DNA from: Octopus bimaculoides
Taxonomy: Eukaryota
Assembly (NCBI RefSeq): GCF_001194135.2
Contig: NC_069007.1
Span: 16,800,098 to 16,836,177 of the forward strand
Direction: 5' to 3'
DNA: 36,080 nt
The position numbers and the translations under genes are program-made. The notes under the pieces were generated by a model. That model searched no databases, had not been told where the DNA came from, and was given only the letters and a program-made list of their open reading frames with translations. The stretch's first letter is position 1. Each line of letters opens with the position of its first letter. Shown piece after piece: positions 2,064-32,892 of the stretch.

Positions 2064-2240
2064 TTATCTTTCAATTGTTCGAAATGACATCTTTTTCTGA
2101 TTTGCGAAGATGCTTTTCCTGTTGACCGATTCCATGCGCTTCAGAGCCTCTTCATTCTTTGCATTGTACCTTAACGTTTTGTCTTTGTAAGGACCATGTG
2201 TGTCTTTAATCAACCACATTTTGTCAATCACTTCACCATC
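2064..2240 (-). CDS. ACP7: ACP7 terminal exon 12 (DGEVIDKMWLIKDTHGPY...MSFRTIER*)
   Basis: Acceptor aatctttcag|GAT, 58 codons then TAA (2066-2064) followed by a second TAA; DGxxID motif. Full CDS is 486 aa with exon 1A and 490 aa with 1B or 1B'. Confidence 0.92.
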   Translation of the reverse strand, partial: DGEVIDKMWLIKDTHGPYKDKTLRYNAKNEEALKRMESVNRKSIFANQKKMSFRTIER

Positions 2241-2715: not shown

Positions 2716-2853
2716 CTTATCATCTGATACTTGTTCCGTATAGAGGTGACTGGAGTTGTAGATCTTCATTCTCGTATAGCCATAGTCTAAGCTGCGAAAC
2801 ACAGACCAAGGGGCAGTTTTGTTTGCGAACGGATCATGCTTCTCTGAACAGCC
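2716..2853 (-). CDS. ACP7: ACP7 exon 11 (GCSEKHDPFANKTAPWSVFRSLDYGYTRMKIYNSSHLYTEQVSDDK)
   Basis: Acceptor ttgactgcag|GGC, donor AAG|GTAAGT, 138 nt, phase 0; YGYTR and EQVSDD motifs. Confidence 0.95.
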
Positions 2854-3713: not shown

Positions 3714-3785
3714 TGCAGATCCTGTGGTAATATGGACTGGAGCTTCTGGATTGTCATATGGGTTTATGGAACTTGTGTTGTAGAT
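3714..3785 (-). CDS. ACP7: ACP7 exon 10 (IYNTSSINPYDNPEAPVHITTGSA)
   Basis: Acceptor attttcag|ATC, donor GCA|GTAAGA, 72 nt, phase 0; PVHIxTGSA motif. Confidence 0.94.
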
Positions 3786-5113: not shown

Positions 5114-5242
5114 ATGTCGATCATAAATCGGTAACAGACGTTCATAAGAGTGCTCATGGGCCCAAATTTCAAGATCAACACCATATTTATAAAATAGGTC
5201 CTCGAGGCCATATGCATGGATTATTGGTACACCCTTTCGAAC
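5114..5242 (-). CDS. ACP7: ACP7 exon 9 (VRKGVPIIHAYGLEDLFYKYGVDLEIWAHEHSYERLLPIYDRH)
   Basis: Acceptor tttttttgtcgag|GTT (unusual GAG), donor CAT|GTGAGT, 129 nt, phase 0; GHXH-type motif (AHEH). Confidence 0.93.
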
Positions 5243-6832: not shown

Positions 6833-6946
6833 CAGACTCTCAGACTTTGTGCAGTCATCCTTGTCATTATTGGAGCAATACATTGGTCTATGGGCCATCG
6901 TTATAATCCAGGGGCGTTTGGCACGGTTGGCTGGTTCATTAGCTTT
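6833..6946 (-). CDS. ACP7: ACP7 exon 8 (KANEPANRAKRPWIITMAHRPMYCSNNDKDDCTKSESL)
   Basis: Acceptor gtattgtag|AAA, donor CTG|GTGAGT, 114 nt, phase 0; VXXH-type motif (TMAH) and RPMYCS. Confidence 0.95.
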
Positions 6947-8301: not shown

Positions 8302-8416
8302 CTTAAGATCAGCTTCCAGCCAATGATATTGATGCTCAATCTGGTAAAGTCCATATTCAATGAAGAAATAATATTCCGTTGAGAAAGAAATCACATGGGC
8401 AGGTCCAATATCAAAA
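8302..8416 (-). CDS. ACP7: ACP7 exon 7 (S-FDIGPAHVISFSTEYYFFIEYGLYQIEHQYHWLEADLK)
   Basis: Acceptor attgtttcag|T, donor AAG|GTGAGA, 115 nt, phase 2 to 0. Confidence 0.95.
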
Positions 8417-9365: not shown

Positions 9366-9434
9366 CTGAAGAACATATTGTCACTGTCAATATCTCCAGG
9401 CATGTGGAACCGGTTCTTGTAATTTGAGAAGTTA
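9366..9434 (-). CDS. ACP7: ACP7 exon 6 (A-NFSNYKNRFHMPGDIDSDNMFF-S)
   Basis: Acceptor tttcctcttccag|T, donor AG|GTATGC, 69 nt, phase 2 to 2; matches the family NFSNYKARFSMP segment. Confidence 0.93.
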
Positions 9435-9984: not shown

Positions 9985-10082
9985 GCATATGCTTCGTGGT
10001 TTCCTGGGCATGTCATGTAAGGAACATTTGCAGCCATTGGTTGAATCAGTTGCATGAATTTGTCACCAACTTCACCATGGCC
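9985..10082 (-). CDS. ACP7: ACP7 exon 5 (GHGEVGDKFMQLIQPMAANVPYMTCPGNHEAY-A)
   Basis: Acceptor ttttctcag|GG, donor GC|GTATGT, 98 nt, phase 0 to 2; GNHE motif. Confidence 0.95.
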
Positions 10083-10094
10083 CTGAGAAAATAT

Positions 10095-10128
10095 AGATAA
10101 GTATATTCGTGTATAAATAAATATATTC

Positions 10129-10164
<36 letters not shown>

Positions 10165-12234: not shown

Positions 12235-12260
12235 TTTGTGCATATCGTAGGCAAAATCGC
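12235..12260 (-). CDS. ACP7: ACP7 exon 4, 26-nt micro-exon (G-DFAYDMHK)
   Basis: Strong acceptor tttcttttttcttttgcag|GC, donor AAA|GTAAGT, phase 1 to 0; supplies the GDXXY motif required between exons 3 and 5. Confidence 0.93.
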
Positions 12261-14179: not shown

Positions 14180-14362
14180 CTACATGGAAGATGGAATCGT
14201 ATAAATTTTGCTTCACTTCTTTCAAAAGTCGGGGTAAAGACTGGGCATTCACACTTCCCATGTCACCAAAGAGGGCAATCATGGGTGCCCAGCTGGAGTC
14301 GTTGCGCTTTGCTGTGAAACTGAACTGTTCACTCCATCCTTGTGGGGAGCCACATCGGTATA
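14180..14362 (-). CDS. ACP7: ACP7 exon 3 (I-YRCGSPQGWSEQFSFTAKRNDSSWAPMIALFGDMG...YDSIFHV-G)
   Basis: Acceptor ccctacag|TA, donor GTAG|GTAAGT, 183 nt, phase 1 to 1; contains metal motif DXG (GDMG). Confidence 0.95.
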
Positions 14363-14369
14363 CTGTAGG

Positions 14370-14470
14370 GAGAGAGAGAGAGAGGAAGAGAGTGAGAGAG
14401 AGGAAGAGAGTGAGAGAGAGGAAGAGAGTGAGAGAGAGGAAGAGAGTGAGAGAGAGGAAGAGAGTTAGAG
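14370..14470. repeat. 18-bp purine tandem repeat (GAGAGAGAGGAAGAGAGT) x about 5, forming the polypyrimidine tract of the exon 3 acceptor
   Basis: Directly visible; starts a few nt from the acceptor AG. Confidence 0.9.
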
Positions 14471-14564
14471 AGAGAGACAAAAGAGGAAGAGATACAAGAG
14501 AGTGAAAGATAGAGACAAGAGAGAAAGCAGGGAGAGGGAGAGAGTGAAAGAGACACACACACAC

Positions 14565-14598
<34 letters not shown>

Positions 14599-15051
14599 CA
14601 CACACACAAATGCGAGAGAATGAGAGATACATACAAGAAAGAGTTAAAGAAAGAGAGACAAGAGTGAAAGAAGACACACACACACACAAGAGAAAGAGAG
14701 AAGAGAGAGTGAGAGACACAGAAAAGAGTAAGACATGCAAGAGAGAGAGAAGAGATAAAAGAAAGAGGAAGAGAAAGTAAGGGGAGAAAAAGTCAGGGCA
14801 AAAAATGATAAAAAGGAGAGAATTAATGGAAGAAATTACAAGAGAGAAAAAGAAAGAATGAATGAGACAGAGAGAGACATTGAAAAAGAGAGTGAGGAAG
14901 AAAAAGCGGAGAAAGACAGAACATTAAAAGACACAGTGAAAAAGAGAGACAAAGAGATAGATAGATGGACTGAACGACGGACAAATGGAGAGACATTGAT
15001 GTAATGTAAGAAAGTGCCAGAAAATATCTAAAGAATTCCGTTTGAACTTAC

Positions 15052-15246
15052 TGTATTTCACGCCTGGTTGAAGATTGGGGACCGTGACGACATGGATATA
15101 TTGAGTGTGGAAATACAGGTCTGGATTGATGAACCGTTGGGCTTTGCCATACGCAACGTGACTAAGAGAATCGGTGCCATATTTTACAATGGTGTTGAGA
15201 CCAGACTTGAAGGTACTCCAGGTAATTATCATGGAATAATCCTCAC
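15052..15246 (-). CDS. ACP7: ACP7 exon 2 (G-EDYSMIITWSTF...YIHVVTVPNLQPGVKY), PAP N-terminal FN3-like domain
   Basis: Acceptor aatcaacag|GT, donor TACA|GTAAGT, 195 nt, phase 1 to 1; aligns with the MTVTW...YIHRVTL..L.PG..Y segment of ACP7 family proteins. Confidence 0.93.
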
Positions 15247-17245: not shown

Positions 17246-17905
17246 CCCACACCCACACTGATGCTTTTCACAAGGTACCTTGGTTTTAGGATCTCAATAC
17301 TGTTGTAGGGGGAAGATCTTCTTGAGTACAGCAATGTGTCATGTATCTCTGTACTCCATTATCTCCTTTGATTAATATCTGAAAAATGAAGGGTTAAAGA
17401 CAGCTATTTACAGCTGTTGCCTGAGACAAAATGAAACACATATATCTATATCTACTTCAAACGTAAAGAAGATCATTTATCGGTTGATTCATTGATCCCC
17501 GAATACAGTGTTTCCAAGATGAATATTGATTTTATGGTGATTCATTGAGACTATATTGTTGAGGTTATCTGTTGTTTACAGCAGTGAATATTCATGCTAA
17601 TTAGTAATTGAATGTTTGATGTTGGTTCCCATACAGAACACGAAAAACACCTATGTATTTGTGTGTGTGTATATGTGTCTGTGTGTGAGTGAGTGTGTGC
17701 ATGTGTGTGTATGTGTACATGTGTGTGTGTATATATATATATATATATGTATACATATCTCCTTGTTTCTTTCTGTGTTCCTTTCTGTGGGAGAGTGTAG
17801 GCTCGAAATGTTAAAGACTTTTTCACTTCCCGAGCATTAAACTAATACATCTGTTTGTTTTCTACACCACCTGTCTTTGTCTTGTTTTTTTGTGAATTCT
17901 CCCCC

Positions 17906-17937
<32 letters not shown>

Positions 17938-19172
17938 TTATGTGTGTGTGTGTGTGTGTATTAGGTAGAGGGGTTCCAAAAGGGGGTCTCAGGGAGTAGC
18001 ATCCCTGCCTTCCTGTGCTAGTTTTCAACCACATTTCTTAAAAATTGTGCTAGAGGCCTTGGTCTAGGGACCACTCATGTTTAGAAATTGAGGTTGGGGG
18101 TAAGCAAGGGCATGCTCCCTGTAGAAAATCCAGCCCCAAAAAAGCCTTATGATAGCAAAGGAGAATGGGCACCAGCCAGCCCAAAGATTGGGGTGAGCTG
18201 CACCTACCTACCTCAGTTGCTATGGCATTGAGGTAGATCTGGCCACCTCTGTTAACAGGGGGTGGCCGGATCTACATATGACTAAGTGAGACCACTTCCT
18301 AAATTCTTAAGTCCATGCAAACATTTTGTGTCCTGTGCAGGAATTTGTTTTGAATGGGTAAAGTGTTGCACAGTGCTGAACCCCCTTCTCAGTGGAGTCA
18401 ACTATATAACCAGTGGCACAACAGAGATTGAGATAACCAGAAACTGACTGTACTTTAGGTTTTTAATGAGTTTACTTTCTCCTAGAAGGAGGTCCTAATG
18501 AGAACTCAGGGCCCTTCACTCCCACTGATCCTCAAGTGTGCGTGTGAGGAGGGAGGAGATTGGCTTCTTCAGTCTTTGTCTACCATATTCACTTGCAAGA
18601 CTTTGGTCAGCCCAGGGCTATAACAGAAGACACTTGCCAATGGTGCCATCCAGAGGGACTGAACCTGGAACCACATGGTTGAGAAACAAGCTTCTTAACC
18701 ACACAGCAATGCATTATACTCAATGTCTGTTTTATCATGGTTTCTAAGACTGGTTTCTTTTTATGCAGGTACTGGTATTCTCATTGAAATTATGGAGGAA
18801 AAATCTGGGATTATGTCTGCAAGTTGAAACAAGTTCATTGTTCTTATTCAAAGGTGAAGTAGTATGGGGGATGAGGGGGGGGGGGGGGGGGTAATGGAAT
18901 AATGTAATGCTTATTTGTTGTACAGGTAACTACTCTAAGTCTACACCATTTACAATGTTTTGAGATGTGTCACATGATCAAACAATGCCATGGCAAGCAA
19001 CATCTAATCCTTGTTTACCTCACAAACATATTAAACACATAGACATTATACATACATACATATATCATCATCATCACCATTTAATGTTCATGTTCTGTGC
19101 TGGCATACATATATATATATATATATATATTTATACATACAGATGTCAAATATATATATATATATATATATA

Positions 19173-20043: not shown

Positions 20044-21057
20044 NNNNNNNNNNNNNNNNNNNNNNNNNNNNNNNNNNNNNNNNNNNNNNNNNNNNNNNNN
20101 NNNNNNNNNNNNNNNNNNNNNNNNNNNNNNNNNNNNNNNNNNNNNNNNNNNNNNNNNNNNNNNNNNNNNNNNNNNNNNNNNNNNNNNNNNNNNNNNNNNN
20201 NNNNNNNNNNNNNNNNNNNNNNNNNNNNNNNNNNNNNNNNNNNNNNNNNNNNNNNNNNNNNNNNNNNNNNNNNNNNNNNNNNNNNNNNNNNNNNNNNNNN
20301 NNNNNNNNNNNNNNNNNNNNNNNNNNNNNNNNNNNNNNNNNNNNNNNNNNNNNNNNNNNNNNNNNNNNNNNNNNNNNNNNNNNNNNNNNNNNNNNNNNNN
20401 NNNNNNNNNNNNNNNNNNNNNNNNNNNNNNNNNNNNNNNNNNNNNNNNNNNNNNNNNNNNNNNNNNNNNNNNNNNNNNNNNNNNNNNNNNNNNNNNNNNN
20501 NNNNNNNNNNNNNNNNNNNNNNNNNNNNNNNNNNNNNNNNNNNNNNNNNNNNNNNNNNNNNNNNNNNNNNNNNNNNNNNNNNNNNNNNNNNNNNNNNNNN
20601 NNNNNNNNNNNNNNNNNNNNNNNNNNNNNNNNNNNNNNNNNNNNNNNNNNNNNNNNNNNNNNNNNNNNNNNNNNNNNNNNNNNNNNNNNNNNNNNNNNNN
20701 NNNNNNNNNNNNNNNNNNNNNNNNNNNNNNNNNNNNNNNNNNNNNNNNNNNNNNNNNNNNNNNNNNNNNNNNNNNNNNNNNNNNNNNNNNNNNNNNNNNN
20801 NNNNNNNNNNNNNNNNNNNNNNNNNNNNNNNNNNNNNNNNNNNNNNNNNNNNNNNNNNNNNNNNNNNNNNNNNNNNNNNNNNNNNNNNNNNNNNNNNNNN
20901 NNNNNNNNNNNNNNNNNNNNNNNNNNNNNNNNNNNNNNNNNNNNNNNNNNNNNNNNNNNNNNNNNNNNNNNNNNNNNNNNNNNNNNNNNNNNNNNNNNNN
21001 NNNGGAACCCTCTCGACGTCGTAAGCGACGGAGTGCCAACAACATATCATTCACACA

Positions 21058-21800: not shown

Positions 21801-22346
21801 GATAATAATAATAATAATAATAATTTTTTTTTTTTTTTTTTTTTTNNNNNNNNNNTCTCTGCCCTAGGTGTACGGAAAACACTCGGCGAGAAATGGGAAA
21901 AAATTTGAAGAAAGAAAAAAAAAACATAATAATAATAATAATAATTACGTAAAATACTGTCTATGTGATCTCAAATTTTAAAACAAACACATAATTTTCT
22001 TCTGATTTCTTAAACATTCTCTAGAACAACACTATGTACAAATCCAAATATAGGGTACCCTAGGCATGACACCTACATGAACTTCTAACTTGTCCCTTGA
22101 GGTCTCTGGGAGAGACTTGGATCCAACTTGTACAAATGCACAGCAAAAGTCAAACATAAAATAATAATAATAATAATAATAGTGTTCTTTGTGAAGAAGA
22201 AGAAGAAGAAGAAGAAACAGAAGAAGAAATAGAAGAGTATTGTAAGAAAGTTGGTCGGACAAAAAGGAAGACGTCTGTGAGACGAATAAAAATGACATTT
22301 GTGAATTAAAAAGAAAACATTAATTGAATTAATAAAATGAACTTGC

Positions 22347-22503
22347 CATAAGCGATGTGTATCTGTTCGGGCAGATAACGGTTGAATTTAGTTGTAGGGT
22401 AACCATTGTAAATAGGTGTAGTGGAACAAAGCAACAAAACGTTGTAGAATGTTAATAACAAAATAGCGAATCTCCTGCACTCATTGAGACTTGAAATCTC
22501 CAT
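22347..22503 (-). CDS. ACP7: ACP7 alternative first coding exon 1B' (near-identical copy of 1B; MEISSLNEC...KFNRYLPEQIHIAY-G)
   Basis: 157 nt, 3 nt different from 1B, same GC donor TATG|GCAAGT, phase 1. Could be a true tandem copy or an uncollapsed haplotype. Confidence 0.65.
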
Positions 22504-22862
22504 CACAACCGTATATAAGCATAATTATATAATTATATCATTATATAATATGTAGGTCTGTGTGGGAAAAGGCTAGACTTCCAACTATCTTGTCACCAGA
22601 TCGAATGCTCAGAATATAAATAAAGTACAAATATATTTAAGTGTCAATATATCACGAGGTTATTGTTGTTGTTTGTCGTTTCACTGCTTAAGTCATTTTT
22701 CTTCTTTCCTGTTTGTTTCTCCTGACGCTACGTAACCGTTATAGTTATCTCCCTTGATAGTCTAATTAGATTACTTGCTCTCTTTTCCTCTCTCCCTCTT
22801 TTCCCCTATCTCTCTCTCTCTTTTCCTCTCTCTCGTTTTCAATTTCCCTCTTTTTACTGCAG

Positions 22863-23176
22863 TTGTGAGTGTTTATTGAGCGAAAACACCTAAAGCCCAA
22901 TGAGGCTCCGGCAGGGGATGGTGGCGAACCCTGCTGTACTCTTCCACCACAACTTTCTCTCACTCTTTCTTCCTGCTTCTGTTGTACCTGTAATTCAAAG
23001 GGTCAGCCTTGTCATACTCTGTGTCACGCTGAATATCCCCGAGAACTACGTTAAGGGTACACGTGTCTGTAGAGTGCTCAGCCACTTGCACGTTAATTTC
23101 ACGAGCAGGCTGTTCTGTTGATCGGATCAACTGGAACCCTCGACATCGTAAGCGACGGAGTGCCAACAAACAACAA
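22863..23176 (+). mobile_element. 5'-truncated family A SINE upstream of exon 1B'
   Basis: High identity to 27677-28067, lacks the tRNA head, absent from the equivalent position upstream of 1B. Confidence 0.85.
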
Positions 23177-23947
23177 TTGTAAACCTAATTTATGGGGCTG
23201 AATCACAATTTTACTCTCTTTGGTGTAGTTTGTGTGTGTGTATATACGTGTAGGACCTTNNNNNNNNNNNNNNNNNNNNNNNNNNNNNNNNNNNNNNNNN
23301 NNNNNNNNNNNNNNNNNNNNNNNNNNNNNNNNNNNNNNNNNNNNNNNNNNNNNNNNNNNNNNNNNNNNNNNNNNNNNNNNNNNNNNNNNNNNNNNNNNNN
23401 NNNNNNNNNNNNNNNNNNNNNNNNNNNNNNNNNNNNNNNNNNNNNNNNNNNNNNNNNNNNNNNNNNNNNNNNNNNNNNNNNNNNNNNNNNNNNNNNNNNN
23501 NNNNNNNNNNNNNNNNNNNNNNNNNNNNNNNNNNNNNNNNNNNNNNNNNNNNNNNNNNNNNNNNNNNNNNNNNNNNNNNNNNNNNNNNNNNNNNNNNNNN
23601 NNNNNNNNNNNNNNNNNNNNNNNNNNNNNNNNNNNNNNNNNNNNNNNNNNNNNNNNNNNNNNNNNNNNNNNNNNNNNNNNNNNNNNNNNNNNNNNNNNNN
23701 NNNNNNNNNNNNNNNNNNNNNNNNNNNNNNNNNNNNNNNNNNNNNNNNNNNNNNNNNNNNNNNNNNNNNNNNNNNNNNNNNNNNNNNNNNNNNNNNNNNN
23801 NNNNNNNNNNNNNNNNNNNNNNNNNNNNNNNNNNNNNNNNNNNNNNNNNNNNNNNNNNNNNNNNNNNNNNNNNNNNNNNNNNNNNNTAAAAATGACATTT
23901 GTGAATTAAAAAAAAAAACATTAATTGAATTAATAAAATGAACTTGC

Positions 23948-24104
23948 CATAAGCGATGTGTATCTGTTCGGGCAGATACGGGTTGAATTTAGTTGTAGGG
24001 TAACCATTGTAAATAGGTGTAGTGGAACAAAGCAACAAAACGTTGTAGAATGTTAATAACAAAATAGCGAATCTCCTGCACTCATTGAGACCTGAAATCT
24101 CCAT
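23948..24104 (-). CDS. ACP7: ACP7 alternative first coding exon 1B (MEISGLNECRRFAILLLTFYNVLLLCSTTPIYNGYPTTKFNPYLPEQIHIAY-G)
   Basis: ATG at 24104 (gttgtgATGG; the ORF track start at 24107 is a GTG), hydrophobic core, PEQIHIAYG. Non-canonical GC donor TATG|GCAAGT; 157 nt, phase 1. Confidence 0.75.
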
Positions 24105-24623
24105 CACAACCGTATATAAGCATAAATATATAATTATATAATATGTAGGTCTGTGTGGGAAAAGGCTAGACTTCCAACTATCTTGTCACCAGATCGAATG
24201 CTCGGAATATAAAGTACAAATATATTTAAGTGTCAATATATCACGAGGGTTTATTACTTCCCTGAGCTTTTGTTGTTTGTCGTTTCACTTCTTTTGTTAT
24301 TTTCTTGTTACCTGTTTGTTTGTTATGACGCTACGTGACAGTTGTCACCCTGGTTATATTAATTCGCTTAACCACTCCCCACCGCTTTCTCTTCCCCCCT
24401 CTCTCTCTCTTTCTGTTTCCCTTTTTATTCTGCGTTTTACTTTTTTTTTTATGGCTGTTGTAAATGGGTGCGGATCAATATTTCACTCTCTTTGGCATAG
24501 TTTGTATGTATTTATCAATCTCACTCTCTCTGTCTATCTGTCTGTCTATCTATCTCTCCATCTGTCTATCTATCTATCTCTCCATCTGTCCATCTATCTA
24601 TCTATCTATCTCTCCATCTGTCC

Positions 24624-24657
<34 letters not shown>

Positions 24658-25781
24658 ATATATATATCTGTCTATCTATCTATCTATATCTATATATCTA
24701 TCTATATGTCTGTCTATCTCTTCAACCTACTCAATCTTTCACCCCTCCAAGCTGTTCACACACAGTCAGTTCTATGTTACTCTCAGCTGAGTCGATGATC
24801 CATCAGACATAAAGATTTTTTCCTGACCTTTATAGTCTTATTTAGGGAGAAACATTGATGTGTCATTTTACTATGCCAAGAGGATCTCACAGATATCTCA
24901 ATTATGAAAATGTCAAATTCAGTATAAATATTGTATACACAAATACATGTTGCTTTTTTTCCGTTCTCATTTGTTTCTTTATTTAACTGTGGCCCTGCTG
25001 GAGCACTACCTTAAAAAGTTTTAGTCGAAGAACTTAACTCCAGGACTTATTCTTTGTAAGCCTAGTACATATTGTATCAGTCTCTTTCACTGAACTGCTA
25101 ATTTATGGAGTCATAAACATACCAGCATCATTTGTCAAGCTATGGCAGGGGGACAAACATAAACACACACACATATGAATATATACATATACATATGATG
25201 AGCTTCTTTCAGTTCCCGTATACCAAATCCACTCATAAGGCTTTGAGTGACCCAAGGTACCACACAGTGGGACTGAACCCAGAATCATGTGGTTGGGAAG
25301 CAAGCTTCTTACCACGCAGCCACGCTGGTGTCTATATTTGATTGATAAAATTTCCCTTTTGTGGTTTGCTGTATAGAAAAATAAAAAACAGTTGTAAACT
25401 AATATGTATTTTGATGTATCAAATGCTACTTTTCAAGTGTAGTGTTGTAGAATACTTTTTATTCAGGCAACAATTTAAGTTCATTTTCACTGAAATATCT
25501 TGAGAGGTCTTCAGTGTCACGGGAAGTTTCATTTCATAGAAATATTGTTAAATTATTGAGGTCAGAACAATTGGTATAAGGAAGTCTATAGTCAAACAAT
25601 TCATTTCTCATCCATAGAAACAACTTTGTCTTCAATTTCAATTAATGAATTAATGTGGTGTTATAGATTTCGCAACTGTATTCTATTTTTGTACCAGGAT
25701 ATTGTAACTGAATCTGGTATTTGTAATCTTGCACAAGATAATTTCTGTAGCTTAGCCTTATAGATGCTGGATCCTCTAAAC

Positions 25782-26083
25782 CAGGGGTTTTCAAACTGTG
25801 GTCCGCGGACCACAGGGGGTCTGCAAAGGACAAGACAGGGGGTCCGTGGACAGCAAATACTTTTTATGGGCAATTTGATTTTATATATGTTTTTTAATCG
25901 AAATCTTTTAATTGACAATAAACCTATTTTGTTAAATACTGTTAAATAAATAAATGTGAAAATATATGTTATTTTAAGCAAATATTTATGTATAAATTTC
26001 ATAAGCGTTTATAAGGGGGTCCCTAAGGTAAAGCCTGAAATATAAATAAGGGGTCCGCAAGTCAAAAAGTTTGAAAACCCCTG
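25782..26083 (+). mobile_element. hAT (Charlie-like) MITE, copy 1, 302 bp
   Basis: TIR CAGGGGTTTTCAAACT / AGTTTGAAAACCCCTG; 8-bp flanks CTCTAAAC (left) and ACCTGGGC (right). Confidence 0.88.
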
Positions 26084-26170
26084 ACCTGGGCAACACAAAC
26101 TACCTCCTAGCTCTAGTTAGATCACCCAGGTAGCAGAAATTACGCACAGCTTTAGTTAGGTCACCTAGGC

Positions 26171-26471
26171 CAGGGGTTTTCAAACTGTGGTCCGCGGACC
26201 ACAGGGGGTTCGCAAGGACAAGACAGGGAGTCCATGGACAGCAAATACTTTTTATGAGCAATTTGATTTTATATATGTTTTTTAATCGAAATCTTTTAAT
26301 TGACAATAAACCTATTTGTTAAATACTGTCAAATAAATAAATGTAAAAATATATGTTATTTTAAGCAAATATTTATGTATAAAATTCATAAGCGTTTATA
26401 AGGGGGTCCCTAAGGTAAAGCCTGAAATATAAATAAGGGGTCCGCAAGTCAAAAAGTTTGCAAAACCCCTG
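26171..26471 (+). mobile_element. hAT (Charlie-like) MITE, copy 2, 301 bp
   Basis: About 10 differences from copy 1; 8-bp flanks ACCTAGGC (left) and CTCTAAAT (right). Confidence 0.88.
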
Positions 26472-26981
26472 CTCTAAATCACAGTATTTAAGGAGAATGG
26501 CAAACAGTGTTTTTAACTTGCCTACTGTGCAAGACACAGAAGTCTCTGGCATTGCTGCCATTCAATGACTATCATCCTATAACAAACCTAATCTAAAAGC
26601 TAGAAGCACAAATGAAACCATCAACAGTTCGAAGGTTGATAAAGGATGTGGGACCACAGATTTTATGGAGAAGCAGCCGTAAGTAGAAACATTCCTGCTG
26701 AGTTGGATACACGGTATAAACTCTTCCCAGAATGTTGTCAAATTGGATATCAGGATAAGCATCAACCTCAGTGCCTCTTTTTTCTGCGATTCCATTGTTT
26801 GTTGTTCCATTGTGTGTGTAAATTTAGTATTTGGTGTTGTTGATTGATCTATGAAAAACACCAACACATTGTCTGATGGTTGGACTCTCTAAGCTTAATT
26901 AATTCAAATTTATTAATGATTGTGAATTGCCTGGGACTTAAAATTTCCTACTGTTCAGTTTATTAACCAGTTAAGCAGGCC

Positions 26982-27166
26982 TGTTGTTGTTGTTGTTGGC
27001 ACTCCGTCGCTTACGACGTCGAGGGTTCCAGTTGATCTGATCAACGGAACAGCCTGCTCATGAAATTAATGTGCAAGTGGCTGGGCACTCCACAGACACG
27101 TGTACCCTTAACGCAATTCTCGGGGATATTCAGCGTGACACAGTGTGACAAGGCTGACCCTTTGAA
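26982..27166 (-). mobile_element. 5'-truncated family A SINE with an 11-bp TSD
   Basis: TTAAGCAGGCC at 26971-26981 and 27167-27177; (CAA)n tail. Confidence 0.9.
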
Positions 27167-27676
27167 TTAAGCAGGCCAAACAAATTAATAACAATGCAAA
27201 TCTTGAAGTCAACTTCAAATCATCGACATACCATCACCATCATCACCATCACCATCATCATCATCATCATCATCATCATTTTGACAGCCACTCTTCCATA
27301 CTTGCACAGTTCAAATAGATTTTATTTGAGGTAAATTTTCTGGGGTAAGACACCCGTCTTGTTGCCAATTCTCACCTGCTTTCTAGTAAGGTAATATTGT
27401 TCCCCATGTCAAGGCGTCGAGCTGGCAGAAACGTTAGCACGTAGGGCGAAATGCTTAGTGGTATTTCATCTGCCGTTACGTTCTGAATTCAAATTCCGCC
27501 GAGATCGACTTTGCCTTTCATCCTTTCGGGGTCGATTAAATAAGTACCAGTTACAAATTGGGGTCGATATAATCAACAGCCCCAGCAAGTTGTCACGTGA
27601 CACTGTCTAAACTTTAACTGCAGTGGTAGTGGTTTTGATGCATGTGGGATTGGTGCTGGCTGTAGTATGCTGATAG

Positions 27677-28067
27677 TGGAGGCGCAATGGCCCAGTGGTT
27701 AGGGCAGCGGACTCGCGGTCATACGATCACGGTTTCGATTCCCAGACTGGGCATTGTGAGTGTTTATTGAGCGAAAACACCTAAAAGCTCCACGAGGCTC
27801 CAGCAGAGGATGGTGGCGAACCTTGCTGTACTCTTTCACCACAACTTTCTCTTACTCTTACTTCCTGTTTCTGTTGTACCTGTAATTCAAAGGGTCAGCC
27901 TTGTCACACTGTGTCACGCTGAATCTCCCCGAGAACTACGTTAAGGGTACACGTGTCTGTGGAGTGCTCAGCCACTTGCACGTTAATTTCACGAGCAGGC
28001 TGTTCCGTTGATCGGATCGACTGGAACCCTCAACGTCGTAAGCGACGGAGTGCCAACAACAACAAAA
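27677..28067 (+). mobile_element. Full-length family A tRNA-derived SINE with a perfect 15-bp TSD
   Basis: GTAGTATGCTGATAG at 27662-27676 and 28068-28082; A and B boxes; CAA tail. Confidence 0.92.
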
Positions 28068-28193
28068 GTAGTATGCTGATAGATGATGATGATGACAAAG
28101 ATGGAGATGATGACGATGATGTTGATGACGATAGTAGCATCATTAACAACACGGTAAGAACAAATAACGAAAGCAAGCTAATTATGGTCTTAC

Positions 28194-28338
28194 CGTAGGA
28201 AATATGTATTTGGTCCGGTTGAGTTCGACTCGGCAGGTAACGGCCTGACACAGCAGTGGTCAATGCCAGGACCAAAATTGGCACCACTGTCACCAAGTGG
28301 CTTGGCGCCAAAAGAAAGTGTCTTGAAAGTTTGGTCAT
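28194..28338 (-). CDS. ACP7: ACP7/PAPL purple acid phosphatase, alternative first coding exon 1A (signal peptide; MTKLSRHFLLAPSHLVTVVPILVLALTTAVSGRYLPSRTQPDQIHISY-G)
   Basis: ATG in a good context (cagtcaccATG), hydrophobic stretch, PDQIHISYG matching the PEQVHLSY start of the PAP N-terminal domain. Donor TACG|GTAAGA; 145 nt = 48 codons + 1, phase 1, compatible with exon 2. Confidence 0.88.
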
Positions 28339-28398
28339 GGTGACTGTTTAGTAGAATTCAACATTTACAAAATGTGGCGGAACTCTGTCGAAAACACC

Positions 28399-28406
28399 TT
28401 TATATG
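28399..28406 (-). promoter_or_regulatory. Candidate TATA box (CATATAAA) for exon 1A
   Basis: TATAAA about 60 nt upstream of the 1A ATG. AT-rich background lowers specificity, and ctaaacag|tcaccATG could instead be an acceptor. Confidence 0.35.
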
Positions 28407-32173: not shown

Positions 32174-32892
32174 NNNNNNNNNNNNNNNNNTGTTTACGCT
32201 TTTCCCTCCGGTTTTTTGTTCTATGTGTGCAATAAATATCGCCATCCGTTTAGAGAAAAATTTGTAGTTTAGAATCAGTAGTTCTTTGACTGCTATTTCT
32301 AAAATTTTCAGTATGTTGGAGAAGCAACTCAATGCTAATCCCTGTATATTTATGATGATAAATGGTTTTACCGATAAAGGTTTTTTCATACTGAACTACT
32401 TGGCAAAATTGTTAATTATTAATTCTATTATTAACTGACGATTCCCTGCCCTTATTCTTGTATATTTTATATATATATATATATGTATGTATGTATGTGT
32501 GTGTATATACATATAGATACGTGTGTGTGTGTGTGAACGCATGTGTATGTGATTGTGTGAGTGCAACTAAAGATACCTACAACAGATTGACAGATAAATA
32601 GATTATATATATACACATTAATACTGACCCTCACGTCCATACATGTGTTATTTAAGAAGTTATATAAAGGAATTAACTACTTCCAGCATAGAATCTCCTT
32701 AAATCTCTTGTATATACTGGACTTATCTCCTTAGGCTGTTGGCTTTAATCTGTTTTGAAGCTCCAAAGTTGGAGGGGAATTGTGTTGGTGGTGGTGGCGG
32801 CAGTGGTGGTGGTGGTGGTGGTGATGCTGTTCGTAGTGGTGATCATGGTGGTAATGGTTATCATGGTGGTGATGGGGAGTGGTGGTAGTGAT

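What the first reader, a model, noticed from the sequence alone, without database searches (positions are those of the whole stretch)
22347..28338. One phosphatase body served by a cassette of duplicated, mutually exclusive signal-peptide first exons
Seen: three co-oriented exons upstream of a single exon 2-12 body. Each has its own ATG, a hydrophobic leader, and ends in P(D/E)QIHI(S/A)Y+G in phase 1. Exons 1A and 1B share the six codons P,Q,I,H,I,Y, and 5 of the 6 differ at the synonymous third position (ccg/ccc, caa/cag, cat/cac, att/atc, tac/tat); the leaders are unrelated in sequence. This pattern suggests an old exon duplication with both copies under purifying selection. Inference: a variable-first-exon/constant-body design using promoter choice could give ACP7 isoforms with different leaders, tissue expression or sorting. 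I do not recall this for ACP7, whose vertebrate form I know with a single leader exon.
Basis: partly seen in the sequence, partly recalled or inferred. Interest (0 to 1): 0.75.

Follow-up and report, generated by a model that had tools for sequence, protein, structure and literature searches.

The report
Octopus ACP7 alternative signal-peptide first exons
The octopus purple acid phosphatase gene (ACP7) has three real alternative first exons, each supplying a start codon, a secretion leader and the first strand of the enzyme, all spliced to one shared body; this is an ordinary alternative-first-exon gene that RefSeq already lists as three isoforms.

Summary
On the minus strand, three ATG-initiated exons (1A 28338-28194, 1B 24104-23948, 1C 22503-22347) all end in phase 1 after P(D/E)QIHI(S/A)Y. 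A single 11-exon phosphatase body follows (15246-2064). The assembly gap lies in non-coding DNA between 1B and 1C and breaks no reading frame.

The three spliced products are letter-for-letter RefSeq proteins of Octopus bimaculoides (XP_014781557, XP_014781554, XP_014781555). Gap-free loci of O. sinensis and O. vulgaris show the same layout: one 1A-type exon, two 1B-type exons and one body.

- 1B and 1C are about 98% identical, flanks included.
- They use GC rather than GT donors, and this is conserved in all species.
- The arrangement is already annotated.

I tested whether 1B/1C is a haplotype or assembly artefact and rejected it. Just upstream of the near-identical core, 1B groups with the upstream O. 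sinensis copy and 1C with the downstream one. The duplication is therefore ancestral, and the core was homogenised by gene conversion.

Argonauta has only one leader exon. Separate promoters, tissue specificity and different sorting remain untested. Interest is low to moderate.

The parts
28194..28338 (-). First exon 1A. It carries the ATG, a signal-peptide-like leader (hydrophobic core VTVVPILVLAL) and PDQIHISY+G. Donor is ACG|gtaaga, phase 1.
   Evidence: The spliced product equals XP_014781557. The ortholog in O. sinensis is L001 10001-10139.
28398..28405 (-). TATA-like ATATAAAG, 60-67 nt upstream of the 1A ATG. It lies inside a block conserved with O. sinensis (28492-28073 matches L001 9837-10263 at 84%).
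   Evidence: Sequence read, O. sinensis counterpart, blastn. Promoter function is inferred, not shown.
23948..24104 (-). First exon 1B. It carries the ATG, the leader MEISGLNECRRFAILLLTFYNVLLLC... and PEQIHIAY+G. Donor is ATG|gcaagt (GC donor), phase 1.
   Evidence: The spliced product equals XP_014781554. It is orthologous to O. sinensis L001 14452-14608.
23887..24247 (-). 1B copy of the homogenised (gene-converted) core: proximal upstream region, exon and the first 61 nt of the intron. It runs into the gap.
   Evidence: 6 substitutions in 360 nt plus 3 indels against 22658-22287. Within-species grouping in this core.
24236..24370 (-). Unique block upstream of the 1B core. Here 1B groups with the upstream O. 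sinensis/O. vulgaris copy.
   Evidence: Informative substitutions split 10:1:0, and a shared indel agrees.
23260..23886 (.). Assembly gap in the non-coding interval between exon 1B (61 nt past its donor) and the upstream region of 1C.
   Evidence: The equivalent gap-free interval in O. sinensis and O. vulgaris has no PAP coding sequence.
22859..23176 (-). SINE-like repeat inserted in the upstream region of the 1C unit and absent at the same site of the 1B unit. It belongs to a family with at least 5 copies in the window.
22647..22773 (-). Unique block upstream of the 1C core. Here 1C groups with the downstream O. sinensis/O. vulgaris copy.
22287..22658 (-). 1C copy of the homogenised core.
22347..22503 (-). 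First exon 1C. It differs from 1B by 3 nt (G5S, P42R) and has the same GC donor.
   Evidence: The spliced product equals XP_014781555. It is orthologous to O. sinensis L001 17701-17857.
15052..15246 (-). Exon 2, the first constant exon and the common acceptor (caacag|GT). It continues the Pur_ac_phosph_N domain.
14180..14362 (-). Exon 3 (contains GDMG).
12235..12260 (-). Exon 4 (GDFAYDMHK).
9985..10082 (-). Exon 5 (contains GNHE).
9366..9434 (-). Exon 6.
8302..8416 (-). Exon 7.
6833..6946 (-). Exon 8 (contains TMAH).
5114..5242 (-). Exon 9 (contains AHEH).
3714..3785 (-). Exon 10.
2716..2853 (-). Exon 11 (Metallophos_C).
2064..2240 (-). Exon 12, ending in stop codon TAA.

Best explanation
The window holds the Octopus bimaculoides ACP7 (purple acid phosphatase) gene on the minus strand. 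It has one constant body (exons 2-12) and three genuine alternative first exons: 1A, and the paralogous pair 1B/1C.

Each first exon supplies a start codon, a signal-peptide-like leader and the first nine residues of the N-terminal PAP domain (P-D/E-Q-I-H-I-S/A-Y-G). Each ends in phase 1, so any one of them joins exon 2 in frame. The intron splits the domain itself, so every usable first exon has to keep that strand. That explains the conserved tail on otherwise divergent leaders.

The exons cannot be chained productively. 1C has no AG in its open upstream frame, and 1A spliced to the only acceptor-like site before 1B hits a stop after five codons. Use is therefore mutually exclusive, most likely by transcription starting at separate promoters (inferred).

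History:
- 1A-type and 1B-type exons are an old duplication.
- The 1B-type exon was duplicated again before O. bimaculoides and O. sinensis/vulgaris split.
- The exon plus its proximal flanks has since been homogenised within each species by gene conversion.
- The 1B-type exons use a conserved GC donor.

The mature proteins would differ only in roughly 10-25 N-terminal residues. The likely value of the design is regulatory (when and where the enzyme is made), not a change in catalysis. That last point is inference.
For: - Gene model: complete ORFs of 486/490/490 aa, all body introns GT-AG, and only one body in the window.
- Exact identity of the three products to RefSeq isoforms XP_014781557/-554/-555 of one gene. 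O. sinensis and O. vulgaris isoforms carry the same three leader types.
- O. vulgaris alternative forms come from PASA updates built on Iso-Seq and RNA-seq (PMC10700109).
- Gap-free loci L001 (O. sinensis) and L002 (O. vulgaris) show 1A-type, two 1B-type and a truncated copy, then exon 2, with GT on 1A and GC on every 1B-type donor.
- Pfam places profile position 1 of PF16656 at residue 41 (1A isoform) or 45 (1B isoform), which is the conserved tail.
- Orthology of the copies: informative sites split 10:1:0 for (1B,sinB)(1C,sinA) in the block just upstream of the core, against 15:6:2 or 6:0:0 for within-species grouping inside the core.
- Between-species dS is about 0.16 for the first exons and 0.153 for the body. 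The exons have no gap columns while their flanks do.
- Upstream frames and acceptor analysis.
- Hydrophobic cores: KD 2.9 for 1A and 2.3 for 1B.
Against: - I saw no reads. Transcript support is second-hand, through annotation pipelines.
- First-exon omega is high (0.44-0.73). On so few codons it cannot be told apart from weak or no constraint on most leader residues.
- The 3 nt that differ between 1B and 1C cause two amino-acid changes.
- Transcription start sites and promoters are not mapped.
- A conserved acceptor-like site (ttttcccacacag|acc) 46 nt upstream of the 1B ATG leaves open that 1B-type exons are preceded by a non-coding exon and share an upstream promoter.
- An older RefSeq isoform (XP_014781556, G5 plus R42) is not encoded by the window and is unexplained.
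- Gaps at 20044-21003 and 23260-23886 could hide further copies.
Confidence: 0.82

Rival explanations
1. 1B and 1C are one exon assembled twice, as two haplotypes or an unmerged contig overlap across the gap. Under this reading the real gene has only two first exons.
For: The copies are about 98% identical, non-coding flanks included. The 1B copy runs straight into the gap, and the contig after the gap starts roughly where homology to the 1B upstream region begins. The only unique flank match downstream of 1C (21745-21622) is to DNA downstream of the upstream O. sinensis copy.
Against: - Upstream of the near-identical core the two copies are only about 68-77% identical.
- In that region 1B groups with the upstream copy and 1C with the downstream copy of gap-free O. 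sinensis/O. vulgaris (10:1:0 informative sites plus a shared indel; 16:1:1). Alleles of one locus could not do this.
- Two full 1B-type exons exist in both gap-free relatives.
- The gap was given a positive size estimate, not an overlap.
Confidence: 0.03
2. The extra leader exons belong to separate ACP7 paralogs whose bodies are hidden in undersized gaps.
For: The region has several gaps of estimated size. The 1B-1C interval is 1.4 kb here against 3.1 kb in O. sinensis.
Against: There is no gap between 1A and 1B. The window has one body only. The gap-free O. sinensis and O. vulgaris loci have the same exon series and one body, with no PAP coding sequence between the leader exons.
Confidence: 0.02
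3. Only one first exon is really used. The others are decaying relics that annotation pipelines keep because they still look like good exons.
For: - The 1B-type exons have non-canonical GC donors.
- The differences between 1B and 1C change two amino acids.
- Omega is 0.5-0.7.
- A truncated third copy exists in O. sinensis/O. vulgaris, so decay does happen here.
- I saw no reads myself.
Against: - ORF, ATG, phase, the PEQIHI motif and the exact G|GCAAGT donor are kept in all six full 1B-type copies of three species, at dS about 0.16 and with no indels, while the flanks are full of indels.
- 1A is equally conserved.
- O. vulgaris alternative forms were added from transcript assemblies only.
- To my knowledge, RefSeq's Gnomon builds extra isoforms from transcript alignments. 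This rests on my own knowledge and was not checked here.
Confidence: 0.1
4. The leaders do more than regulate. 1A-type and 1B-type leaders send the same enzyme to different places, for example efficiently secreted versus retained or membrane-anchored, so that promoter choice acts as a sorting switch.
For: The leaders differ strongly. The hydrophobic cores differ in strength (2.9 against 2.3) and 1B has an acidic, uncharged n-region. O. vulgaris also has a leaderless 'MENA' isoform.
Against: Both leaders look like ordinary cleavable signal peptides, with h-regions of about 15 residues that are too short for an anchor. No localisation predictor or experiment was available.
Confidence: 0.15

Closest known systems
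RefSeq/UniProt annotation of this very gene: O. bimaculoides 'acid phosphatase type 7' isoforms XP_014781554/-555/-557, with the counterparts in O. sinensis (XP_029652684-6) and O. vulgaris (CAI9741659-63)
   Same: The proteins are identical.
   Different: The databases only list isoforms. The exon-cassette history (ancestral duplication, gene conversion, conserved GC donors) is not described in any paper I could find.
Variable-first-exon / constant-exon loci such as UGT1A and the clustered protocadherins (from established knowledge)
   Same: Tandem, duplicated first exons each carry their own start codon and 5' splice site and join one common acceptor. Use is mutually exclusive. Neighbouring variable exons evolve in concert.
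   Different: There are only three exons (plus a truncated one in relatives). The variable part encodes just a leader and one beta-strand, not a functional domain, so it adds hardly any protein diversity. Separate promoters are not shown.
Vertebrate ACP7 (PAPL) and other animal or plant purple acid phosphatases
   Same: The Pfam architecture is the same (Pur_ac_phosph_N, Metallophos, Metallophos_C), as are the metal-ligand motifs GDMG, GDFAY, GNHE, TMAH and AHEH, and there is an N-terminal leader followed by PEQ(I/V)H(I/L)S.
   Different: Known relatives, including the octopod Argonauta hians, have a single leader exon at the locus examined.
GC-AG introns (minor class of U2-type introns, from established knowledge)
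   Same: The donor G|GCAAGT fits the strong consensus typical of GC donors. To my knowledge such donors are over-represented at alternatively used sites.
   Different: Nothing unusual, apart from conservation of the GC donor across all paralogous copies in three species.

Membership tests
Purple acid phosphatase / ACP7 (metallophosphoesterase) | Domain architecture Pur_ac_phosph_N + Metallophos + Metallophos_C | tested here: met
   PF16656 (67 bits), PF00149 (74 bits) and PF14008 (76.5 bits) are all above their curated cut-offs in both the 1A and 1B isoforms.
Purple acid phosphatase / ACP7 (metallophosphoesterase) | Five metal-ligand motifs GDxG, GDxxY, GNH(D/E), xxxH, xHxH | tested here: met
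   GDMG 146-149, GDFAY 175-179, GNHE 210-213, TMAH 293-296 and AHEH 343-346 in the 1A isoform.
Purple acid phosphatase / ACP7 (metallophosphoesterase) | Cleavable N-terminal signal peptide | tested here: inconclusive
   Hydrophobic cores have KD(11) of 2.9 (1A) and 2.3 (1B), and small residues sit at plausible -3/-1 positions (by eye). No SignalP was available.
Purple acid phosphatase / ACP7 (metallophosphoesterase) | Acid phosphatase activity with a binuclear metal centre | not testable with these tools
   Needs expression and an enzyme assay.
Variable-first-exon / constant-body gene (UGT1A- or clustered-protocadherin-like design) | Several tandem first exons, each with its own ATG and 5' splice site in the same phase | tested here: met
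   1A, 1B and 1C all end in phase 1 after ...IHI(S/A)Y. The same holds in O. sinensis and O. vulgaris.
Variable-first-exon / constant-body gene (UGT1A- or clustered-protocadherin-like design) | One common acceptor and one set of constant exons | tested here: met
   There is a single exon 2 acceptor at 15246 and a single body in the window and in both gap-free relatives.
Variable-first-exon / constant-body gene (UGT1A- or clustered-protocadherin-like design) | Variable exons cannot be joined to each other productively | tested here: met
   1C has no AG in the 21 nt of open frame before its ATG. 1A spliced to the acceptor-like site before 1B reads G|AC CTA CAT ATT ATA TAA, which ends in a stop.
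Variable-first-exon / constant-body gene (UGT1A- or clustered-protocadherin-like design) | Transcripts joining each variable exon to the constant exons | tested here: met
   The evidence is indirect. The three products are exact RefSeq isoforms, and the O. vulgaris isoforms with the three leader types come from an annotation whose alternative forms derive from Iso-Seq/RNA-seq PASA assemblies. I did not see reads.
Variable-first-exon / constant-body gene (UGT1A- or clustered-protocadherin-like design) | A separate promoter in front of each variable exon | not testable with these tools
   There are only hints: a TATA-like element 60-67 nt upstream of the 1A ATG, and conserved, AT-rich proximal regions upstream of 1B/1C. 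CAGE or 5'RACE is needed.
Variable-first-exon / constant-body gene (UGT1A- or clustered-protocadherin-like design) | The variable exon encodes a functionally distinct domain that diversifies the protein | tested here: not met
   The variable exon encodes only the leader plus positions 1-9 of PF16656. The mature proteins would differ by about 10-25 N-terminal residues.
Assembly false duplication (haplotig or unmerged overlap) | Copies are allelic throughout and correspond to a single locus in gap-free relatives | tested here: not met
   The far-upstream blocks are diverged, and each groups with a different copy in O. sinensis/O. vulgaris. Both relatives have two full copies.
GC-AG intron | GC donor with otherwise strong consensus, conserved in orthologs | tested here: met
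   G|GCAAGT is present in 1B, 1C, both O. sinensis copies, both O. vulgaris copies and the truncated copies.

The most novel reading that the evidence does not exclude
The Octopus ACP7 leader cassette may be a small, still-evolving variable-exon cluster. It has one 1A-type exon, two or three 1B-type exons kept alike by gene conversion, and a leaderless mini-exon. Under this reading, promoter choice would set both the tissue in which the phosphatase is made and its fate (secreted, retained or cytosolic). That would be a lineage-specific innovation of Octopus, absent from Argonauta.
Probability: 0.15. Interest if true: 0.5.

Novelty: already known. Interest (0 to 1): 0.25.

Why it matters
It matters little beyond annotation quality. 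The result confirms that the three RefSeq isoforms of octopus ACP7 rest on real, conserved exons and not on an artefact of a gappy assembly. It also explains why the tail of each leader exon is conserved: it is the first strand of the enzyme's N-terminal domain.

The small new point is evolutionary. The 1B-type first exon was duplicated before the Octopus species split, and its core has been kept nearly identical within each species by gene conversion, non-canonical GC donor included. That gives a compact example of concerted evolution of alternative first exons in a cephalopod. If the leaders proved to drive tissue-specific expression or different sorting, the locus would be a convenient small model of promoter-coupled leader choice.

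Tried and rejected
1. Assembly-artefact hypothesis for 1B/1C. I favoured it at first because the copies are near-identical, flank the gap, and the homology edges sit at contig ends. I rejected it after comparison with gap-free O. sinensis/O. vulgaris. A six-sequence alignment through the GA-rich low-complexity DNA gave a noisier count of 15:9:2. The clean unique block gave 10:1:0.

2. Downstream-flank orthology. Most matches were (ATT)n microsatellite and uninformative. The one unique match (21745-21622 to L001 about 15015-15137, 81%) lies downstream of the other O. sinensis copy. It is best read as a paralogous remnant of a longer duplication unit. This is not resolved.

3. First homology search with the N-terminal 187 aa. 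It returned no cephalopod protein at all, with a best identity of 51%. The full-length search did return the Octopus cluster. The exact-sequence look-up was the informative step.

4. Exhaustive representative search. It gave no close cephalopod representative and nothing on leader evolution.

5. Homology of the 1A and 1B leaders outside the motif. The result is marginal, with shuffle p from 0.013 to 0.23, so it is neither established nor excluded.

6. dN/dS on the first exons. Omega is 0.44-0.73 against 0.39 for the body, on too few codons to discriminate.

7. Search of the window for the O. vulgaris 'MENA' mini-exon. Nothing was found. Its O. sinensis position corresponds to gap 20044-21003.

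8. Literature searches for ACP7 alternative first exons, or for ACP7 in octopus. Nothing relevant was found.

9. Look-ups of some isoforms by exact product failed, because only one product per gene is on record.

Full report
**What is there.**
The window has twelve N runs. On the minus strand it carries a complete purple acid phosphatase gene. tblastn with mollusc homologues, followed by inspection of the splice sites, gives eleven body exons, all with AG acceptors and GT donors:
- E2 15246-15052
- E3 14362-14180
- E4 12260-12235
- E5 10082-9985
- E6 9434-9366
- E7 8416-8302
- E8 6946-6833
- E9 5242-5114
- E10 3785-3714
- E11 2853-2716
- E12 2240-2064

Each ends with one base of a Gly codon after ...P(D/E)QIHI(S/A)Y, and exon 2 (caacag|GT GAG GAT...) completes that codon. 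Joined to the body they give open reading frames of 486, 490 and 490 residues. The product has the Pur_ac_phosph_N, Metallophos and Metallophos_C domains and the five metal-ligand motifs. No other PAP-like coding sequence exists between 15300 and 36080.

**The gap.**
N 23260-23886 begins 61 nt after the 1B donor and ends in the upstream region of the 1C unit. No exon abuts it and no reading frame crosses it. In the gap-free O. sinensis and O. vulgaris loci the equivalent interval is about 3.1 kb of repeats with no PAP coding sequence. The gap is probably undersized but hides no gene body.

- The 1B and 1C donors are G|GCAAGT, so these are GC-AG introns. 1A has G|GTAAGA.
- 1B and 1C are near-identical copies of a unit that includes non-coding flanks. 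Over 24247-23887 against 22658-22287 there are 6 substitutions in 360 nt plus three indels. Three of the substitutions are in the exon and change two residues (G5S, P42R).
- A SINE-like element (23176-22859) sits in the upstream region of the 1C unit, and homology to the 1B upstream region resumes beyond it.

**It is already annotated.**
An exact-sequence look-up shows that the three spliced products are RefSeq proteins of Octopus bimaculoides: XP_014781557 (1A), XP_014781554 (1B) and XP_014781555 (1C), listed as 'acid phosphatase type 7' isoforms of one gene. The same 90% cluster holds three O. sinensis isoforms and five O. vulgaris isoforms. These carry one 1A-type leader (MTKLSRNFLLAPSH...) and two distinct 1B-type leaders (MEIPGPYDSRRF..., MDIPGPYDRRRF...). 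In the O. vulgaris annotation, alternative forms were added by PASA updates from Iso-Seq and RNA-seq assemblies (PMC10700109). That is second-hand transcript evidence that each leader type is joined to exon 2.

**Is 1B/1C an assembly artefact?**
I took this seriously because the copies flank the gap and the homology edges coincide with contig ends. The comparison below rejects it.
- The O. sinensis locus (L001) has no N. It has a 1A-type exon (10001-10139, GT donor), two full 1B-type exons (14452-14608 and 17701-17857, GC donors), a truncated third copy (18036-18078, GC donor) and one body starting at 32570.
- O. vulgaris (L002) has no N and the same layout.
- In the unique 130-nt block just upstream of the near-identical core, informative substitutions split 10:1:0. 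1B groups with the upstream O. sinensis copy and 1C with the downstream one, and a shared indel agrees. A broader alignment gave 16:1:1.
- Inside the core the signal flips to within-species grouping: 15:6:2, 6:0:0, and the exon alignment.

The 1B-type exon was therefore already duplicated in the common ancestor. Its core (proximal upstream region, exon, start of intron) has been homogenised within each species by gene conversion. 1B and 1C are real paralogous exons.

**Constraint.**
- Between O. bimaculoides and O. sinensis the first exons have dS of about 0.16 and omega of 0.44-0.73. The body has dS 0.153 and omega 0.39. On about 50 codons this is weak evidence.
- All copies keep the ATG, the open frame, the phase, the PEQIHI tail and their donor.
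- The exons have no gap columns, or only an in-frame 6-nt difference in 1A, whereas the flanks are full of indels.
- Outside the tail the two leaders show only marginal similarity.

**Why the tail is conserved.**
Pfam places position 1 of the Pur_ac_phosph_N profile at the P of P(D/E)QIHI. The first intron therefore splits the domain after its first strand, and any functional first exon must carry that strand.

**Mutual exclusivity.**
1C has no AG within the 21 nt of open frame before its ATG. In 1B the only acceptor-like site is ttttcccacacag|acc, 46 nt upstream of the ATG. Entered from 1A in phase 1, it gives a stop after five codons. The exons therefore cannot be chained productively. Each transcript uses one of them, most simply by starting at its own promoter. 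That last step is inference. I found only a TATA-like element upstream of 1A and conserved AT-rich proximal regions upstream of 1B/1C.

**Distribution.**
The full-length search found an ACP7-like protein of the octopod Argonauta hians at 61% identity. Its gap-free locus has a single leader exon with a GT donor 3.8 kb upstream of exon 2. There is no other PEQIHI-type exon within 10 kb upstream. The cassette may therefore be specific to the Octopus lineage, but orthology of the Argonauta gene was not proven.

**Verdict.**
The design is an ordinary alternative-first-exon gene that public annotation already records, so it is not new. The evolutionary detail (ancestral duplication, gene conversion, conserved GC donors) is a modest addition. 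Promoter use, tissue specificity and any effect of leader choice on sorting remain untested.

Noticed in passing
not in the window; protein P0036 = XP_014781556.1: An older RefSeq isoform of the same gene has a hybrid 1B-type leader (Gly5 as in 1B, Arg42 as in 1C). Neither copy in the window encodes it, and there is no AGGT site that could splice 1B into 1C. It may point to a third 1B-type exon hidden in a gap, or to a sequence change between assembly versions.
   Followed up: partly
L001 18036-18078 (O. sinensis); L002 18871-18913 (O. vulgaris): A truncated third 1B-type copy (KFNPYQPEQIHIAYG plus the GC donor, no ATG or leader) lies about 140-165 nt downstream of the second full copy. No such copy is in the readable O. 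bimaculoides sequence.
   Followed up: partly
L001 19304-19316; corresponds to window gap 20044-21003: A mini first exon ATGGAAAATGCAG|gt ('MENA', phase 1) is used in O. vulgaris isoform CAI9741662. It gives a protein with no signal peptide and no first beta-strand. It was not found in the window (0 matches with up to 3 mismatches).
   Followed up: partly
window 24164-24151 (before 1B) and 22571-22558 (before 1C), minus strand: An acceptor-like polypyrimidine tract plus CAG (ttttcccacacag|acc) lies 46 or 54 nt upstream of the 1B/1C start codons. It is conserved in all 1B-type copies of three species. These exons might be preceded by a non-coding exon rather than being true first exons.
   Followed up: partly
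window 28065-27676, 27179-26987 (inverted), 23176-22859, 21431-21059 (another starts at about 21050 before the gap), 2557-2410: These are copies of one SINE-like repeat family, 91-95% identical to each other (the 2557-2410 copy about 81-86%). The family is also present in O. sinensis (L001 8226-8605, 16422-16801). One copy is inserted in the 1C upstream region but not in the 1B one.
   Followed up: partly
window 17255-16876; L001 23860-27368: An intron-1 minisatellite (HSP offsets of about 26 nt) spans about 0.4 kb in O. bimaculoides and about 3.5 kb in O. sinensis. It accounts for much of the difference in intron size.
   Followed up: no
window 25781-26083 and 26170-26471: A direct repeat of about 300 nt at 96% identity lies between exons 1A and 1B. 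Its nature was not examined.
   Followed up: no
window 24123-24121 and 22522-22520, minus strand: An out-of-frame upstream ATG lies 19 nt before the 1B/1C start codon, giving a 13-codon uORF that overlaps the start. It is absent in O. sinensis, which has ATA at that position.
   Followed up: no
window 15050-14370, minus strand (intron 2): About 650 nt of CT-rich low-complexity sequence with (CTCTCACTCTCTTC)n-like repeats fills most of intron 2.
   Followed up: no
L003 10001-10151 (Argonauta hians): The Argonauta ACP7-like gene has one leader exon only, with a GT donor. Its leader ends ...LLLC...YNPEQIHISYG, slightly closer to the 1B type (42% identity over 31 residues).
   Followed up: partly
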